Source: Bispira polyomma (Eukaryota). Taken from it: a stretch of 64,000 nt of DNA. Under the pieces are notes generated by a model. It made no database searches. It was not told the DNA's origin and was given only the letters and a program-made list of their open reading frames with translations. Position 1 is the first letter of the stretch; each line of letters starts with the position of its first letter. Shown piece by piece: positions 500 through 11,344 of the stretch. The stretch lies in contig OZ287750.1 of assembly GCA_965649765.1 (NCBI GenBank), forward strand, positions 47,864,001 to 47,928,000. Reading direction: 5' to 3'. A program made the position numbers and the translations under genes.

Positions 500-1936
500 G
501 GCTAAAATAATACACAAAGACATGCCAATTTTAATATCGACAGAAAAAAATGCGATATAAAGAACTGGTTTAATTTACAATTTTTACATTAATTAAATTT
601 CACACAATTTTGCCAAGAAGATACATAATATGTATCAGGTTTACTACAGAAAAAAAAATTGTAGACAAAATTAAACTATCACCATTTATAAATTTATGAA
701 AACATCATTAGTTTGTTCATTTGTAAATGCATATCAAAATGTCATTTTGGTGTCATTTACATTAAAAGTGTTGCTGTGGTAAAATAAACCACAGTCCAGT
801 ACGCATTCTAGAGAGTGGTTGTCTGTATCCTAACAAACTTGCTATAGTAAGGTTGGCCAAAACAGTGTTCTTGATATGGGATCGCTGTAAATTGCTATTA
901 AGTTCTTGTAATTCATGTGCTCTCATGACAATCTAGCACTTTCTCATTAAAATAAAATGTCTATGACAAGTTTGCAAATTGCTTTTAAATCCCTTTTTTA
1001 TGGCAAGTCCATGTGGTTTTATAATGGCAATCTAGCACTCACTCATTAATACCATAAAACATCTGTGATGACCAGTTTGTGACTTGCTTTTACTTTATAA
1101 TAACTCTAATCCATGTGTATTCCTAATAGCAATTAATGAGGTGTGTCTGTCTGATTCCATTACACATTTACAACAGCTTTGAACAGTAAACAACTCTGTT
1201 GCTAGCAGCTGCACTTCAAAAAAAAAGATGTTAGTCTTCCCATATTGTGCCCCTAAACCCACAGTGAGTAGGATACAATAGCAGTAGTTTTTGTTTAAAT
1301 TTTATTCCTTGTTTTAATTATTTTAACGGTATGTTGTATTAAAAGTTAAATATATTTAAATTTACATAAAATATTGTCTGTAGTTTATTTATGTTTTAAT
1401 ATTTCATAAAAACCTTCACAATGAAGCTCCACCAGTACGATACAGTATAGACGGTGCACTGTATATCGAGGACATAAGTAAGCACATAGTTGTTAGTCCG
1501 TGGATATATGACTATTTGACATAAAGTCAGTGCGTATTTCTACTAACGTCCTATCTTAGAGCTACCTGTTTAATAAGCCAATTCAGCATTTTGAGTGCGC
1601 ATGTATAAATAGCCGTGTGTGTGCTTCGGTTCAGGATAAACAAACCACTGAAACCTAACAGAAACAGATCACATATTGACATTTACTTAAATTAAATGTT
1701 ATAACGTACAATTACTGTAAAACTAAACTTATAATCAAGAAGCTCTCATCAAAACTTTTCCTTCGGTACCAAGACTGCATATATTATTGCTTTATACTAA
1801 TTGTTTTAATTATTTCTAAAATATGAAGTTGTAAAAATTGCAGACATTTTGCAGGATTTCGAAACACTCTGTCGTTATCGCTCACACGTGGCTTTATTTA
1901 TCCCGACGTGGACATGCGCACTTGATCTTCTTTCTT

Positions 1937-2114
1937 TAATATTCCCCCTAACAGCTTAAACCATGACGAAGTTGTGCGTCAGTTCCAGATGCAACAATTA
2001 AAAAAAAAAACACAACAATAACAATTAATATTCCCCCTAACAGCTTAAACCATGACGAAGTTGTGCGTCAGTTCCAGATGCAACAATTAAAAAAAAAAAC
2101 ACAACAATAACAAT
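1937..2114. repeat. Perfect 89-bp tandem duplication
   Basis: 1937-2025 is identical to 2026-2114, including the A11 tract. Confidence 0.95.
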
Positions 2115-2119
2115 ATTTA

Positions 2120-2450
2120 CAGTTTGTTTTAAAATCTTGTGCATGGTGACTCAAATCAACTTGGTCCTGGCTTTTAGACGAGGGTCCAGGATTTTGTGGT
2201 TGCAGCTTTAACGAACCTCAGTGATGTTATCAAGGTAACCAGCTGAGGTTTAAATGAGTCTATTGTAGGAAGGGTGGCTAGTTCTATCGGGAGACTATTC
2301 CAGAATCTAACTGTTCTAACATAGAATTGATTTTTAAAGGCTTCGGAGAAAATGCTGAATTGGCTTTGTTACCACCAGTATGAGTGCCCTAGACCAAATA
2401 ATCTGTCCCTATTTAGCAAGATTCCTTGCTGTTATTTTGACAGTTAAATC
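2120..2450 (-). mobile_element. CR1-group LINE 3' fragment
   Basis: Minus strand translates to FKNQFYVRTVRFWNSLPIELATLPTIDSFK, the typical ORF2 C-terminal WNxLP motif. Confidence 0.7.
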
Positions 2451-2959
2451 GTGAAAAGGCACAGAACGGCTACTATAAGCAAAACGTTTAAAAAGCCGTC
2501 ATTGGCAGCAAACTCGCACTAAAGTGCGGATATCAATGGCTACTTAGCTTTTTATCGCTCATTAAAATTTTCCGATGAACCGTAAATATATATTTCAAAG
2601 AAATTTAAATAACATCTTGTTAAGAAAGCGTTGCTCGATGAAGTAAACAAAGTACAATACAAAGAAGCTTTGCCACCTATTAAATAAACATAAAAGGAAA
2701 CTGACCAAAACAAAGTAGCTCCTACTAGATACCGAAATGGCAGAAAAAGCCACAAGAGGTACATACTAACCCTCGGATCCTATCCGAGCGGCAGTGGCAA
2801 AGTATAATTCTAATGGAAAGTAAAACCGTAAATAGCAATCTACTTAAATGTTAATGGGTGTATGGGATGATATTTTTCTTTCGGAGATAGTCATATAACA
2901 TCAAGATATTAAATCAAGACATAAGATTCACTTACTGATCTCCGAAAACTATAATATGC

Positions 2960-3745
2960 ACGTCGTATTGTATTGTATATTTTTAACGCGCCTTATTGAT
3001 AATAGGCATCTCCTAAGACACAACATCAAAATCAATCAGTCAATAGAAAAATCGATAAACAATAGCCAGGCCGTAAGGATGGATGCATCAGCGCACAGGG
3101 AAAGGACTACAGAGGATAGGCAAGCCTGAAGAGATAGGTTTTGAGCTTTTTCCTAAATCTAGAAAGTGTTTCAAGCATTCTAAGCTAGACTGGAAGGCAG
3201 TTCCATAGCATAGGGGCGGCAACTGAAGGCTTAGATCCGACCCTCTTGGTTGGTTTTTAGAGGAAACAGAGAGCCTCTTTCCCCTCTTGAGGTTGCTGAA
3301 GGAGAGTTTTGTAGCAAGGTAGTGAGGCTGTTGAGAGACAACAGCTTTAAAGGTAGTTACATGAATTTTAAACAGGATTCGATAGTGAATTGGAAGCCAA
3401 TGGAGTTGCTTGAGGTATGGTGTTACATCAGTACGAATACCCGAAATATGACTCTACATAGATGGTTTTGAATGGACTGCAGCTTGTTTATGTGAGACTT
3501 ATTAGCTTCAAACATAAGAGAATTACAGTAGTCAAGGCGGCTACTCACAAGAGCATTGGCCACAGTGATAGCAGTATCTAGTGACAGATAATTTCTGATT
3601 CTTTTGAAATCCCAAATGTGATAGTAGCAGGAGCGGCGAATGTTGTTAATGTGAGGAAGAAATGAAAAAGCAGGGTCAATAGTGACACCTAGGTATTTGA
3701 CCTGTTCTGAAGGTGTAATGCCCAGTAGTGTCATTGGGAAAAGTA
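2960..3745 (-). mobile_element. 5'-truncated L2-clade LINE (RT C-terminus, 3' UTR, (ATACA)n tail)
   Basis: VKYLGVTID...SRLDYCNSL...KLQSIQN, then frameshifted LHWLPIHYRILFK and VAAPMLWNCLP...FRKKLKTYLF; short tandem tail at 2965-2980. Confidence 0.9.
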
Positions 3746-5749
3746 TTAAGTATTAACATTTTAATTTACATTTAGTACACAGAAAGACGTATGTAGTAAT
3801 AAAATTACTGTTGTTACAAAATTAATGCCAGATAGTGGTATGACAAAATTTTTTTTTGTGTGTGTGTAAATCTTGTATTTTGACAGCAAATGCTTGAAAT
3901 TACAATGTACCAATACACGCATTCTTAAAAAAAAAAAGTAACCATATGTATAGATCTACAGTTATTACATTTACGTTTGTTTATATAAAAGAACACAAAG
4001 ACTACACAGGACACTTACAGCACAAGTCAACGGACAATTATCACAGGACAAACACAAACATTGTCACCACTAGCTATTGGAAATATTTAATTATAACAGT
4101 AATGTTATTACATAACAACATTAATATCTACAATAAAACATTGCATAGTTTTTTTAATTCTTCGATGGTTGGATGTTTTTTTTTTCTAGTTTTGACTTCC
4201 AGATGTAATATTTACCATAAAGTATAATTGTATTCATTTGATTCACAATAACATTTTTATGATCACTTTCAAGTATTCCCCAAAAAATTTGCTTCTCTGA
4301 TAAAATTCGGTATGACAAAGATACATTTATTACCTTTATTATGTATGTACAGATTATTTTTTATTTATTTGTTAGTTATTCTGGCTGTTATCTTATCACC
4401 AGTCACCCTGTTGTAAGATTAAAATATAACATGATGCAAATGTACAATTTTTTTCGTTATAACAGTTTAAAATTTCACTTGAAAGATAGCACTAGATGAC
4501 ACGAAATTGAATCTTAACCTTGCAAACTCTTTTACAAGGTGTTGAATATGGAGTTTTAATCTCTCTGGTATACGACCATGCAGTATACTACTGTTATTAT
4601 GAATCTACTCTTGTCTTAATTGTTAAACATAAATTATACCCAAATGGTATAACAATAGGGGACACTTACAACAATGCTGGCTGAGCTGTTTGAATGTGAA
4701 AATCTGTAAGTTTATGTAACAGGAAATATATCTCGTTAAAAAAAGAAAAACTATGTTACTCCTAGATTGATACAGCTTGTGCTTAAAGTTCATAGAAGAT
4801 TATTTTTTACTGAAATCAATAAATGAAATAAATGGGCTTGTCTGTAGGAGCCCAGATAATTATTTACTAAATACATATCTTACAATTCTTAATGCTGACT
4901 AGCATTGAATCTGGTCGTCACAATATGACTTAAACTGTTGAAAGCGTCCTAAAACTCAACTAAATTCAAATTATACCATTTGTGATGCCTTAAAAGTAAA
5001 TTTTCATGCCTTTAGCTCATTCTCTGTCGTGGAAAACTAAACCCTATTCCTGGACCCTACTATGTATGGCTCAACTACGCACACACATATATATATATAT
5101 ATATATACTATCAGAATTCAAGCAGCTCTGGCTTTAATGAAATGCCTTTATTAAGTTTTATCCATACTTAGGACACTGAAGTATGACTTCTTAGATAAGA
5201 TTTAGACTTCACCAAAATGCATGCATGGTTTTTTATGACATTAAAAATTAAGTGAATCTTGCCTCACAATGGAATAAAATAAACAAGAGAAGAATGGCCT
5301 GGCGGCCATATCATGATAATGCCACTACAAATCAAGTTACTGTTGAGTCTGAAAATAGTGAACCAGTCACTAGTTAGCAGTCGAAATGGATTTCTAGAAC
5401 CATCTACTGTGGGGAACCGAGTAAGGTAAACGAAAATTAAAATCTGAAACATCTATATATAAACAAAATTTACGAGACCCGAAAAAACGTTCTTCACAAA
5501 ATAATAATCCGTTACTAGTGAGGTTTGGTTAGTCTACCGTAATAGTGAAGTGGACAAAATTGATCTTAACCTCAAATATTAACTTAAAAAGTGTGTATAG
5601 GAAGCTAAAAAAAGACATATACAAAGCATTCAGTGACCAATGAATCGGTTACATATCTTCGATACATAAAATGTGAATAACATTGACATTTGTAAAATAA
5701 AATAAAATGTTGCAACTGTAACCTCCCCATTCTTGATATCTGAGAAGTT

Positions 5750-6615
5750 TACATCAGTATACAAATGTAAATAAAATCCACCAAGCAGGTTTTGTGTTAC
5801 TGTCTGGAAGTAATTAAACACTTTAAATTCATTATAATACTTTTACTGTTGAGAGTTTAAGGTCACCATAGGGTTCCTTAGGTCCATATACTTGTCCATC
5901 TATGCGCCGAATATAAATGAAATCCATCAAGCAGTTTTAAAGTTAGAGTCCAGAATGACTAAAACATGCTGTAACCTTAAAGTCGTCAGAAAATGTTAAC
6001 TCTTAGTAGTTTAAGGTCATCATACAATAGGGTTCTTCCTCAGGTCCATATACATGTACATCTATGTGCCAAATATAAATGAAATCCATCAAACAGTTTT
6101 GAAGTTAGAGTCCAGAATGACTGAAACATGCTGTAACCTAAAAGACGTTATAAAATTTTAACTCTTATCTTCCAAGGAGTTTAAGGGCACCATACAGAAA
6201 AGTTCCTGCTCAGGTCCATATAAACCTGTGTTTCATATTAATGAAATCCATTAAGCAGTTTTAAAGTTAGAGTCCAGAAAAGCTGAAATATGTTGTAACC
6301 TTAAAGTCGTTATGAAATTTTAAATCTTAGGGAGTATAAGGTCATCATACAATAGAGTTCCTCCTCAGGTCCATATACATCTGTGTACCAAATATGAATG
6401 AAATCCATCAAGCAGTTTTGGAGTTAGAGTCCAGAAAGCTGAAATATGTTGTAACCTTAAAGTCGTTATGGAATTTTAGCTCTTAGGAGTTTAAGGCCAC
6501 CATATAATATGGTTACTCCACAGGTCCATACGGATCTGTGTACCAAATATGAATGAAATCCATCAAACAGTTCTAAAGTTAGAGTCCAGAATGACTGAAA
6601 CATGCTGTAATCTTA
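5750..6615. repeat. ~160-bp tandem array (~5.5 copies), satellite/HINE-core-like
   Basis: gaaatccatcaagcagtttt..agttagagtccagaa recurs near 5775, 5920, 6082, 6244, 6402 and 6556. Confidence 0.9.
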
Positions 6616-6810
6616 ATAAGGTTTGTCCTATATATACCGGTATATGCCTTTTGAAATGGACCCTTCAATCAAATCTGACAATGTCAATATATAAAACTTG
6701 AATAACTTATACTATACCCACTATAATCAAGCCAAATTAATTTTGGACCAACTAGAGACCAGAGAGTGTATATATTCCAAATATAAAAGCACAACGCCTT
6801 ACAGATTGTA

Positions 6811-9482
6811 AAAATTTTATTGTAATTTATCTCTTTGGAAGATAAATACTTACCTTATCCTCACTAATGCTTTAATTTAGTACACCTAAATATGTTCGAC
6901 CAAAAAATCACTTGAGTCTTTTTTTAAAAGACTATTCTTGCGATTCGACTTAAATTATTCTCACCAACCTCACTGCGCATATGCCGGAAGTCCCTTCAAC
7001 TCTCGTCCTAGAGATGCCCTTCACAATTAATTTGAGAGATGTTTCCACAAATAAAAGTGGGGCTGGTTGGGACGGGATCTGGATTAGTGAGGATAAGTTA
7101 AGTATTTATCTTCCAAAAAGATAAATCACAATAAAATTTTACATTTTATTGCGATAAATACACCTTACCTTATCCTCACTAATGTTTGAATCCAACCTTG
7201 AAGGAGGAGGGCTATTTGTGTGAAACAGAGCCCCACATAAGGAATTAAGGAGTTTTGAAGCATTACTTGTTGAGGATAAGGCATTTGACTTACTCTTGTC
7301 ACTTCAGAAGAAGCATGTAAGTCTGACAAAACAGCCAACTACACAACTGGAAAACAAGTATTGCTGCGTTCTATACCGATATGACTATACCATATATGCA
7401 TGTCAATTGGCCAAGAAGATAATGTCATCTGGCTATCATGCTCAACCATCATCAAAATGACATCACATCCCACAGATGATCTCTTCACAAGATGCCACTT
7501 AATGAAAAGCTTGCAAGAAAAAAAAACAGACAAGTCATCAGCACATGCAAAGATGTATGTAGACAGTATTAAGGAAATTACTTCACTGGACAATTTCTAA
7601 TGAAACCAGTAAGTAGGGCACCAACTGACTACTTCACTTTGTGGTAAGTAGTGCTGTCCTGCAAAGATAAGTAAGGACACTTTACTGGACATTTCCTTAT
7701 GAACCAATAAATATTCAACTAACAGACCACTCAGATAATGTAAGTAGAACTGTAGAAACAATAAGACGAAACTACTTCACTGATAAGTGTCCTGGTATCA
7801 GTAAATAGTAAACCAGAAAGTCGCTTTACTCCATGATAAGTGATGCTTTACTTAAAGATAAAAGAGAGTGACTTCACTGAACAGTTCCTAGAGAACCAGT
7901 AAGCACTCAATCAACCCTATTCAAATTCATGAAAATAGTGCTGTCCGTTAAGGATTAAAAGATTTACTTAACTGGACAGTTTAGTAACCCAGTAAGAATT
8001 CAAACAGCAACCTCCTTCACTCCAAGGTAAGTGGAGCTGTACTGGAAGGATATGGAAAAATACTTTACTGGACAGTTTCTAAAAAAACAGTAAATATTCA
8101 CCCAACAGCATACCAAACAACATGCAAGTAGTGCTGTCCTTTAAGGATAAGAAGAATTACTTCACTGGACAGTTTAATGAACAGTAAGAATTCAGCCAGT
8201 AAAACAACTTCACTCCATGGTAAGTAGTGCTGAATTACAAGGACCAAGAAAGTACATCACTGAACAGTTACTTATGTGCCAGTAAGTATTCAACCAGCAG
8301 CCTACTTCATTCAATGGTAAGTGTGCTGAATTTTAAGGATACAGTTACTTTACTAGACATTTCTTATGAACCAGCAAGTATTCATCCAACCTTCTACTTG
8401 AAGACATGGTAATAAGAGTATGCCTCTATACCAGTACTAAACATGTAGAGCATGAAAACCCAGATGGAGAAACAATACATGACCCACTTAATAGATAAGG
8501 TACTGCACTCTGGTCGTCATCCAGACGTCATCATCTTCCCCAACAGAAAAACTCTTCACTTCTAGAACTCACATGAAGAGAACTAAAATTGAGAAAAACA
8601 AAACAGCTCATCAGCATATGACTGTATGTATGACGATAAAATACTCCCTGTGACAGATCTAACAAGATAATATCTTCCAGATCTGCCAGGACATCAAAAA
8701 TAAATTCCAGCAAATGAACCGTCCAGGGCAGGTTTAATGGCTGGAATGAACACCAATGAAACAGAATCTGCAAGCTCAGATGCCAATTAATTCAGTTTAT
8801 GAGTTTCAGACATCTCCAAAACATCAGGTACCCTACACAGCAATGGTCCTAAGCTTAAAATTCCCTGTCTGATAATCCTATAACCAGGACCATCCTCAAT
8901 GATAATTGTATTTGAACATCTCCTGCATCAATTGGAAAGCTTGACTACAGGACCGAAAACATAATCCATCCAGCACCAATCAAATCGCCAACTGTGGGGA
9001 AAATGTACAGAAGCACGAGCATTGGTCGATGAAGTAAACATTCTGTAGTAATCACCCTATCTCTGGTCTTGAAACTGTGAAATCGTTCTGGGCTGGAATT
9101 CAATGTTGAAGATCACAAGGCCAAAAACTGCTCAACTCCAACCAATTCCTTGCATTTGGAATAAAATATCTAAAACAAGTACTGCAACCTTTACTGCAGG
9201 CCTCTGTAAATACTATTCTACCAACTAGCTTCTCATTGGTAAACTTCCAAAAATACTTGGCTGGAAAAAAACTGCTTCTGCTTTGAAATAAGTCTGTCAC
9301 TTTGTCACCTGACTTAAAAAGAAATGATAGCTCAGACACTCGATTTCCTGACTTCCGGCGCATGCATCACAAGAATAGTCTTTTAAAAAAAGACTCAAGT
9401 GATTTTTTGGTTGAACATATTTAGGTGTACTAAATTAAAGCATTAGTGAGGATAAGGTAAGGTTTATTTATCGCAATAAAAT
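6811..9482 (-). mobile_element. Non-autonomous or decayed DIRS1-like tyrosine-recombinase retroelement (ITRs plus ICR)
   Basis: ~100-bp inverted repeats (6843-6940 / 9370-9472) with non-identical outer ends. Internal segment 7083-7184 is complementary to both outer ends joined. T-rich termini, no obvious TSD. Confidence 0.8.
7560..8412. repeat. ~96-bp diverged tandem array (~9 copies) inside the DIRS-like element
   Basis: ttcactggac-like anchor recurs near 7582, 7681, 7776, 7873, 7968, 8064, 8161, 8256 and 8349. Confidence 0.85.
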
Positions 9483-10199
9483 CAGAGATTACCCTGTGGA
9501 CAGGATGTTGTCCTGCGTAACTATGGTTCTTCCACTATCCCCCCCTCTTTCTCCAGAAAAGCATGATTATGCCAAAAAGAATTGGCATAATCATGCAAAA
9601 AAGGCTTGAATTGTAAATGTGTCTCATAGGTCAACACACCAGGCTTGTTTGACATTTGTAAAATACATCTTAGGAACCAGGGGGCACTATAAGTCAATAC
9701 TTGCTGTGCATACATTATGCTGTTCTAGCAAAATAAGCCATACTGTTACCTTGTGCAGAGGAACGACTAATAAAAATACCAATGTTGACTTTTGTCTTAT
9801 CTAGGTATGATATGTTTATCTCAGAAAAGACATGCGAAAGATAAATTTACATCAGAAAATATCATTGGACTAGAGAGTGTAATGTTATAGTCGGAGAGAA
9901 GTTCCAACCCTAAAAATCCTATCTACTCCATATAGGAATGCCATGAACTGATCACAGAATGGGGTGGTAGTCAGAAGAATCTTATTTATAAATTGTCTAT
10001 TAACAAATTCCAAGGCTGATCAAACTGTAACAAGCAATCTCATTAGCTAGATCTGCAATCTCATTAAAAACTGGTAAAATGGATTGTTAATAATATAGAA
10101 TGTGGAAAAAAATTATTAAACATATTGCAGGATTTATAGAAGAAACTTATGAACAATAAATGACCAAGGTACATAGTCTTTTAGGTCCGTGTAATTTTG

Positions 10200-10341
10200 G
10201 GTTCGTATTCAAGAATAACAATCATCTTGGGTCATATTGGGACAGGCCCAGAGCATTTGCCACTTGTGGGAGGCGAACCCCATAGACGTGACAGCCTGTG
10301 ATTAGATGCCAAACTTGCTAACCACTCGGCCACTGAGGACC
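10200..10341 (-). mobile_element. Short tRNA-derived SINE
   Basis: A box TGGCCGAGTGG and B box GGTTCGCCTCCC followed by a non-tRNA body. Confidence 0.7.
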
Positions 10342-11344
10342 TTTATCTTGCTTGAAGGTATTTTAACTAATTTGGTGATAGCGAATTATAGTATAAAACT
10401 TTAAGACAGAGTTATTGACCAAAACATTTCTTTGGACGATTTTAAGTGCAAAAAGTAGATCAAAATAATTTTTTAAAATTTTTTTTAACAAGAGCACTGC
10501 TAAGGACTCTCGAAAATTGACAAATTACGCACAGTGCTTTGAATATGTTGACCAACATATAGTACTTGGGCATTCTGTAAACAAGTACATACATTGCATG
10601 CATATCCTTGCATTATATACTAGCAGTCTTGGAAATACAGACTGGATAAGATTTCAAGATTTCCACCCCAGATCAAAGTAAGGCAAGACCTTAATGTTGC
10701 ACATTTAGACCTATTAATACTAAATACAAACTTATTTTGGACTAGTTGTACCCAAGATACAGCATTGACAGGTGCTGCACCTTTCATCCATCAACATATA
10801 TATATAAGCTTAAGATAAATGATTTGTCCAGATCTTCTAAAATAGTTGAAATTAAGTGTTAATGTAAGCCCGCTCAGGCCTCAAAGCAATCCAAAGTCCC
10901 CTGCCACAACCTGGTGCTCATATTTGTTGAGACTTCCAGTAGTTTACCTTTCAAAGAAATCATTTTCATGATAATGGCTATGGTGGTTTAAAAATCAATC
11001 ACTATTTAATCTAGAATGAGCTGCTGTCAAGCTAAACCTGTGCATTACACTTGGTAGAGAGATCTGCATCATTTTATCTTTAACTGCGAGAAAATGTTTT
11101 TACAATGACCATAGCAATTCTAAGCGAGCTACTTCCATGAAAAATCATGAATGAAATGTGAGCAAAAAAATCTGCTGTATAGTTTTCAGGGAAATCAATT
11201 TACACAGCTTTTGAATAAGGACAGCGGCAGTGTGTGGTCAGGTGTCTCATCTTTACAAGATAGGATAAAACAAAAGTCAATAAATATTGACAATATATCA
11301 CATTATTTGATGCACAATAACTAACTTTCACAAAAGAAAAACAG

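What the first reader, a model, noticed from the sequence alone, without database searches (positions are those of the whole stretch)
6811..9482. Miniature DIRS1-type retroelement: complete ITR and ICR cis-signals without a recognisable intact ORF
Seen: the termini share a ~100-bp inverted repeat but differ at their outer ends (left aaaattttattgtaatttatctctttggaagataaat, right atttatcgcaataaaat). Segment 7083-7184 consists of the complement of the left end, ac, and the complement of the right end, i.e. a copy of the circle junction. Established: this ITR plus internal complementary region layout defines DIRS1-like tyrosine-recombinase retrotransposons, which integrate a circular intermediate without TSDs, and the ICR lies near the 3' end (so the element is on the minus strand). 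At 2.7 kb I find no RT, RNase H or recombinase motif, while the cis-signals are almost unmutated. Inference: a non-autonomous DIRS derivative mobilised in trans (a TRIM/MITE analogue for this class). This is the best candidate in the window for an undescribed mobile system.
Basis: partly seen in the sequence, partly recalled or inferred. Interest (0 to 1): 0.8.

Follow-up and report, generated by a model that had tools for sequence, protein, structure and literature searches.

The report
Deleted copy of ORF-less DIRS-type repeat
The 2.7-kb element is a one-off, internally deleted and decayed copy of a very abundant 5.5-kb jumping-gene family that keeps the end signals of DIRS-type retrotransposons but encodes no protein, so it is not a new miniature mobile system, although its parent family is a good example of a parasite of other retrotransposons.

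Summary
Inverted terminal repeats bound the element, and an internal segment spells the joined ends, as in DIRS1-type retrotransposons. The element lies on the minus strand.

Two corrections apply. The true limits are 6808-9482, because the "ac" in the internal segment pairs with gt at 6808-6809 and is not a spacer. The signals are 94-98% matched, not almost unmutated.

The 2.7-kb form is not a family. Every other copy examined continues for about 2.9 kb where the window copy jumps into its right repeat. The window copy equals a 5.4-5.6-kb element minus 2,872 bp and about 33 bp. Its deletion junction is unique in the 1.04-Gb assembly.

The parent family has about 4,000 copies, precise ends and differing flanks. 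It makes no target-site duplication; about 2,400 uninterrupted paralogues of the target exist. Variants at the ends are mirrored in the internal segment. The family has no open frame above 126 codons that escapes stops shared among copies, and no protein domain or relative was detectable.

It is best read as a large non-autonomous DIRS1-type family copied by enzymes supplied in trans. The helper element was not identified.

The parts
6808..9482 (-). Whole element: an internally deleted copy (2,675 bp) of a ~5.5-kb ORF-less DIRS1-type family
   Evidence: Limits are fixed by paralogous empty sites and by the shared left ends of about 25 copies. It is 87-92% identical to other copies over 1-2543.
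6808..6848 (-). Unique outer segment of the sense-strand 3' end, not part of the inverted repeat
   Evidence: Its reverse complement is at 7102-7142.
6849..7043 (-). Complete 3' inverted terminal repeat arm
   Evidence: 6849-6944 pairs with 9366-9461. Its inner part matches the inner right arm of full-length copies.
7083..7142 (-). Internal complementary region, half that matches the left (3') terminus, including 'ac'
7143..7191 (-). Internal complementary region, half that matches the right (5') terminus
   Evidence: 49 nt, 94%.
7570..8420 (-). Internal array of about nine diverged 95-98-bp tandem units, present in all family copies
9350..9351 (.). Junction of the large deletion (2,872 bp of L033 missing), exact to about 1-3 nt
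   Evidence: A 32-mer across it is unique in the genome.
9351..9365 (-). 15-nt island of inner repeat sequence retained between the two deletions
9365..9366 (.). Junction of the second deletion (about 33 bp of the right repeat arm)
   Evidence: The window's own left arm still holds this stretch.
9366..9461 (-). Remaining outer part of the 5' inverted terminal repeat arm
9462..9482 (-). Unique outer segment of the sense-strand 5' end
   Evidence: Its reverse complement lies within 7143-7191.
6794..6807 (.). Left half of the target site, part of another repeat family
   Evidence: Left and right halves joined occur 2,379 times at up to 3 mismatches.
9483..9496 (.). Right half of the target site
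   Evidence: and joints 6806->9482 and 6807->9484.

Best explanation
Window 6808-9482 (minus strand) is a dead, single-copy deletion derivative of a high-copy (~4,000) 5.4-5.6-kb repeat family.

The family has the complete cis architecture of DIRS1-type tyrosine-recombinase retrotransposons. It has inverted terminal repeats of about 200 nt with unlike outer tips. It also has an internal complementary region that spells the joined ends exactly. It has no coding capacity of its own.

Inferred mechanism for the family:
1. An RNA is made that lacks the extreme tips.
2. It is reverse-transcribed by enzymes supplied in trans by an autonomous DIRS-order element.
3. The internal complementary region restores and aligns the two tips.
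4. A tyrosine recombinase inserts the product next to an A-A-T-T-like motif, without target-site duplication.

The window copy inserted in this way into a member of another repeat family. At or after insertion it lost 2,872 bp plus about 33 bp, covering the inner half of its 5' repeat arm and the 5' half of the interior. It has since drifted about 5% from the family norm and has left no progeny.

What is shown: the architecture, copy number, precise ends, TSD-less insertion, the unique deletion junction, the ORF-less master, and the co-variation of ends with the internal region. What is inferred: the RNA route, supply of enzymes in trans, and the identity of the helper.
For: Architecture:
- Shown: Other copies run on:
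- 29 loci match the query only over 1-2543, then share at least 1.5 kb more.
- Full-length copies with both ends are L031 (5,395 bp), L033 (5,599 bp), L045 (5,496 bp) and L047 (5,520 bp).

The window copy is a deletion form:
- It equals the full-length element minus L033 coordinates 2569-5440 and about 33 bp.
- The junction 32-mer has 1 hit genome-wide at up to 3 mismatches.
- A 111-nt probe across the junction matches in full only to itself.

Copy number:
- 8,147 hits for the left-end/internal-region 34-mer and 2,313 for the right-end 33-mer, with controls at 0.

Independent insertions:
- About 20 different left flanks, all with the identical terminus.

No target-site duplication:
- The joined flanks occur 2,379 times, 3 of them exact.
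- Contig joints run 6806->9482.

ORF-less master:
- 222 sense-strand stops are shared by at least 60% of 41 copies.
- The longest interval free of shared stops is 378 nt.
- There is no ORF of 120 aa or more in L031 or L033.
- 30 frames were blank in Pfam.
- The 257-259-aa frame was blank in the word search, in phmmer against 1.84 billion representatives and against PDB sequences.

Functional coupling of ends and internal region:
- They are identical over 60 nt in 13 of about 22 copies, although the copies differ by 3-8% overall.
- The L045/L047 subfamily carries the same variants in its tips and its internal region.

Established knowledge:
- Structure and TSD-less integration of DIRS1-like elements are described in PMC3266345.
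- A non-autonomous DIRS-order element, TOC1, is known (PMC9940879).
Against: - No autonomous partner with these ends was found. After no more genome sequence could be fetched, so elements with intact recombinase frames could not be compared.
- There is no RNA or cDNA evidence. The three runs found are contigs of unknown kind.
- The 5' 1.4 kb of the family is covered by only 2-6 copies in the shared-stop count.
- Junction uniqueness was tested at up to 3 mismatches in 32 nt, so a sibling more than about 10% diverged at the junction would be missed.
- The target motif (ATT before the insertion point) is similar to the element's own last bases (AAT) but not identical. The published 3-bp identity model is therefore not met cleanly.
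Confidence: 0.8

Rival explanations
1. One reading: the 2.7-kb unit is a distinct miniature non-autonomous DIRS family, amplified in trans like a TRIM or MITE.
For: Both tips and the internal complementary region are retained, and insertion was clean. DIRS-1 proteins can act in trans (PMC7192593).
Against: The deletion junction is unique in 1.04 Gb. All 29 other loci carry the longer form or other truncations. The copy is older and more mutated than the family norm. Half of its 5' repeat arm is missing.
Confidence: 0.03
2. The 5.5-kb family is an ordinary autonomous DIRS1-like element whose copies decayed after insertion, so the window copy is a deletion of a once-coding element.
For: The size matches autonomous DIRS1-like elements, at 4.7-5.9 kb for the mollusc and lizard entries of Table 3 in PMC3266345. 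Open frames of 80 aa or more are commoner on the sense strand between family coordinates about 1570 and 4050.
Against: The stops are shared among copies and subfamilies, so they predate amplification. No RT, RNase H, methyltransferase, recombinase or gag signal appears in any of 30 frames. phmmer gave 0 hits. About 850 bp of the interior is a tandem repeat, and more minisatellites lie in the 5' part.
Confidence: 0.08
3. It is not a retroelement. It is a DNA transposon or foldback element with long terminal inverted repeats that happens to carry an internal copy of its ends.
For: It has long inverted repeats and no coding capacity.
Against: There is no target-site duplication. The outer tips are unlike each other. 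The internal segment is exactly right end plus left end in inverse orientation, at a fixed place in all copies. That segment co-varies with the tips.
Confidence: 0.04

Closest known systems
DIRS1-like retrotransposons of animals (e.g. LgDIRS and AcaDIRS of molluscs; PMC3266345)
   Same: Inverted terminal repeats with unlike outer tips. Two abutting internal complementary regions near the 3' end that give the circle junction. Length about 5 kb. A/T-only junction and target motif. No target-site duplication.
   Different: No gag, RT/RNase H/methyltransferase or recombinase frames. The interior holds tandem repeats. The target trinucleotide is similar to the element's terminal trinucleotide, not identical. 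No sequence relation to any named element was tested.
TOC1 of Chlamydomonas, called a non-autonomous DIRS retrotransposon (PMC9940879)
   Same: A DIRS-order element named in the literature as non-autonomous and present in multiple copies.
   Different: From my own memory, not tested here: TOC1 has split direct repeats rather than ITR plus ICR, is about 5.7 kb and has TOC3 as its likely helper. It comes from a different kingdom. The family here has thousands of copies.
LARD/TRIM (non-autonomous LTR retrotransposons) and the engineered truncated DIRS-1 donor of PMC7192593
   Same: Elements that keep cis signals and depend on proteins supplied in trans. The engineered DIRS-1 donor lacking GAG, RT and RNase H coding capacity was still reverse-transcribed by endogenous RT.
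   Different: LARD and TRIM use LTRs and integrase. The engineered construct is artificial. Natural trans-mobilisation of this family is inferred, not shown.

Membership tests
DIRS1-like (ITR/ICR-type) tyrosine-recombinase retrotransposons | Inverted terminal repeats bounding the element | tested here: met
   96 nt, 98% in the window copy; 195 nt, 94% in L033.
DIRS1-like (ITR/ICR-type) tyrosine-recombinase retrotransposons | Internal complementary region near the 3' end, complementary to the start of one end and the end of the other | tested here: met
   It is an exact junction of right end and left end, at the same place in all copies.
DIRS1-like (ITR/ICR-type) tyrosine-recombinase retrotransposons | Insertion without target-site duplication | tested here: met
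   2,379 uninterrupted paralogues of the joined flanks; joints. The five two-ended copies show no duplication.
DIRS1-like (ITR/ICR-type) tyrosine-recombinase retrotransposons | Short junction motif identical to a motif in the target (3-bp crossover) | tested here: inconclusive
   The left flank ends in ATT in 19 of 24 independent copies, AAT in 3 and ACT in 2. The element's right end is AAT. The crossover is ambiguous by only 1 nt.
DIRS1-like (ITR/ICR-type) tyrosine-recombinase retrotransposons | Encodes gag, RT/RNase H (and methyltransferase) and a tyrosine recombinase | tested here: not met
   It can therefore be filed only as a non-autonomous element with DIRS1-type ends, on cis structure alone.
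Non-autonomous retrotransposon family amplified in trans | Many copies with identical ends in different flanks | tested here: met
   Met for the 5.5-kb family. Not met for the 2.7-kb form, which is unique.
Non-autonomous retrotransposon family amplified in trans | The source element already lacked coding capacity during amplification | tested here: met
   222 shared stops, and the longest frame free of shared stops is 126 codons over coordinates 1400-5603. The 5' 1.4 kb rests on few copies.
Non-autonomous retrotransposon family amplified in trans | An autonomous partner with matching ends in the same genome | not tested
   The genome holds many intact recombinase frames of 328-358 aa.
TIR DNA transposon / MITE | Target-site duplication flanking terminal inverted repeats | tested here: not met

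The most novel reading that the evidence does not exclude
The ORF-less 5.5-kb family is a large, long-lived non-autonomous DIRS1-type retrotransposon. It has about 4,000 copies and several subfamilies, and would make up to about 2% of the genome if most copies were full length. It would be kept mobile by enzymes of a different autonomous element. That element might be one of the Ngaro-type elements, which are the intact recombinase-bearing elements noted elsewhere in this genome. This would be cross-superfamily parasitism, in which only the ITR/ICR signals are under selection.
Probability: 0.15. Interest if true: 0.6.

Novelty: new member of a known kind. Interest (0 to 1): 0.3.

Why it matters
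The window copy itself is ordinary genomic debris.

The parent family is worth a line in a repeat annotation. It shows that DIRS1-type end signals can sustain thousands of insertions without any coding capacity. Its tips and internal complementary region are far better conserved than the rest of the element and change together. That is natural-history support for the experimental finding that the ICR is essential and that DIRS proteins act in trans (PMC7192593).

It also gives a clean, abundant substrate for defining the recombinase's target choice. Thousands of filled sites and thousands of empty paralogues are available.

Tried and rejected
1. RT vestige. From memory, a stretch in the longest frame (F-L-D-Y, then G-L-V, then F-L-G) looked like RT motifs C to E. 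No search supported it: Pfam at E up to 10, the word search, phmmer against 1.84 billion proteins and PDB sequences. Rejected as unsupported.

2. Sense-strand excess of open frames as a sign of a former gene. The copies are not independent, and base composition alone gives about a 1.5-fold bias by my own estimate. No claim is made.

3. A recombinase frame at C1:74731100 lies beside a family copy. About 1.5 such coincidences are expected by chance, and its position would overlap the 5' repeat arm. I read it as a nested or adjacent element. It was not fetched.

4. Head-to-tail joints 9482->6810 in contigs could suggest circles or tandems. The letters between them (GA and others) match variants of the internal region in other subfamilies, such as L002. 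This is no evidence of circles.

5. Rfam and tRNA scans of 5800-10500 were blank.

6. A search for flank paralogues inside the held loci was blank. The question was settled by the genome pattern search.

Shared stops were only counted across natural copies.

Full report
**Observation.**
- Inverted arms lie at 6849-6944 and 9366-9461 (96 nt, 98%).
- Segment 7083-7140 is the reverse complement of 6811-6868 (95%).
- Segment 7143-7191 is the reverse complement of 9434-9482 (94%).
- The outer tips are unlike each other.
- No ORF exceeds 87 aa.
- The interior holds about nine diverged 95-98-bp tandem units between about 7570 and 8420.

**The 2.7-kb unit is not a family.** A search of the window's own 1.04-Gb assembly gave 3,542 first-look candidates.
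- The 29 best other loci, at 87-92% identity, match the query only over positions 1-2543. None has the right arm after that point.
- Their downstream 1.5 kb is instead shared among them.
- Longer fetches show full-length copies of 5.4-5.6 kb: L031, L033, L045 and L047. Their arms are at least 195 nt, and the same internal segment is present.
- Aligned to L033, the window copy lacks family positions 2569-5440 (2,872 bp). After a retained 15-nt island (window 9351-9365) it lacks a further 33 bp or so of the right arm. The window's own left arm still carries that stretch.
- A 32-mer across the junction occurs once in the genome at up to 3 mismatches. A 111-nt probe matches in full only to itself.

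**Limits and insertion.** In about 25 copies the left terminus is identical and is always preceded by different flanking DNA.
- The 'gt' at 6808-6809 is part of that constant terminus. The 'ac' of the internal segment pairs with it, so the segment is an exact junction of right end and left end with no spacer.
- Contigs of three public runs contain joints 6806->9482 and 6807->9484.
- The sequence made by joining the window's two flanks occurs 2,379 times in the assembly at up to 3 mismatches. Three are exact, and the reversed control gives 0.
- The copy therefore sits inside a member of another repeat family, between ...CAGATT and CAGAG..., with no duplicated or lost target bases.
- Across 24 independent copies, the three bases before the insertion point are ATT in 19, AAT in 3 and ACT in 2. 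The element's own last three bases are AAT.
- This is close to the short-motif crossover described for DIRS1-like elements, where mollusc elements use ATT/AAT (PMC3266345). The motifs are not identical, so I leave that feature inconclusive.

**The parent family.** The left-end 34-mer, which also occurs inverted in the internal segment, has 8,147 hits at up to 3 mismatches.
- That implies about 4,000 copies. The right-end 33-mer has 2,313 hits. Both controls are 0.
- Sampled copies are 92-97% identical to each other. L045 and L047 form a subfamily at 96.5% over the best 4.2-kb alignment (87-90% over their 5' parts). The window copy groups with the older L002/L003 type.

**Coding capacity is absent.**
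- There is no ORF of 120 aa or more in L031 or L033.
- Thirty of the longest frames from many copies give nothing in Pfam at E up to 10.
- The longest frame, 257-259 aa in L045, gives nothing in the word-based protein search. It also gives nothing in phmmer against 1.84 billion representatives or against PDB sequences.
- Counting stops across 41 natural copies, 222 sense-strand stops are shared by at least 60% of copies over family positions 1400-5603.
- No frame escapes shared stops for more than 378 nt.
- The stops therefore predate the amplification, and the source elements were already ORF-less. The first 1.4 kb rests on only 2-6 copies, which also show no long frame.

**The end signals behave as functional parts.** The terminal 60 nt and the reverse complement of the internal segment are identical in 13 of about 22 copies, although those copies differ by 3-8% overall.
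- The L045/L047 subfamily carries its own variants at both tips: a C near the left tip and a three-base change near the right tip. The same variants appear in its internal segment.
- This fits the model in which the internal region restores the tips at each cycle.
- It also fits the experiments showing that the ICR is essential and that DIRS-1 RT and other proteins act in trans (PMC7192593).
- A non-autonomous DIRS-order element, TOC1, is already named in the literature (PMC9940879). The kind is therefore known.

**The window copy is old.** It has 3+3 mismatches between its tips and internal segment. Roughly 140 positions differ from the bulk of family contigs. It has the lowest identity to other copies. 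With half of its 5' arm gone and no siblings, I read it as dead.

**Limits of this work.**
I did not try to obtain more sequence by other means.
- The many intact recombinase frames of 328-358 aa in this genome could therefore not be checked for matching ends, and the helper is unidentified.
- No RNA run was found.
- Scan notes mention Ngaro-type elements and another ORF-less DIRS1-type element elsewhere in this genome. I used these only as leads.

**Verdict.** The object is a unique deletion copy. The parent is a new member of a known kind, a non-autonomous DIRS-order element.

Noticed in passing
window 6617-6807 and 9483-9700: The two flanks of the element are halves of another repeat family. 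About 2,400 uninterrupted copies carry the joined sequence. The right half holds a perfect 13-nt-stem hairpin at about 9563-9597. The family was not identified.
   Followed up: partly
window 5910-6616: A tandem repeat of 155-162-bp units, about 4.5 copies at 81% match, lies just upstream of the target repeat.
   Followed up: no
L012, L014, L017, L020, L025, L027 (left flanks, 1-1500 of each oriented locus): Six family copies share up to about 1.2 kb of left flank (as little as ~330 bp contiguous in pairs with L014) at 88-98% identity, about as similar as the elements themselves at 95-98%. Either they are same-site insertions into a repeat, or element plus flank were duplicated as a unit.
   Followed up: partly
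G000:C1:74726210-74731950 (not fetched): A 328-aa open frame with a tyrosine-recombinase match, on the same strand, lies at the 5' edge of a divergent family copy. It is probably a nested or adjacent Ngaro-like element, but it is the one place where a helper could be looked for first.
   Followed up: no
L034:1818-3638 (-): A 607-aa open frame whose N-terminal sequence, read by eye only (no domain search run), recalls a LINE-type reverse transcriptase sits beside a family copy.
   Followed up: no
L045:8032-9921: Long open frames on both strands (up to 630 aa) are produced by a tandem repeat with a period of about 21-24 aa, next to a family copy.
   Followed up: no
L033:5593-6173 (family 5' part, absent from the window copy): Minisatellites of 14/28 bp and 29/55/84 bp lie in the 5' third of full-length family copies.
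   Followed up: no
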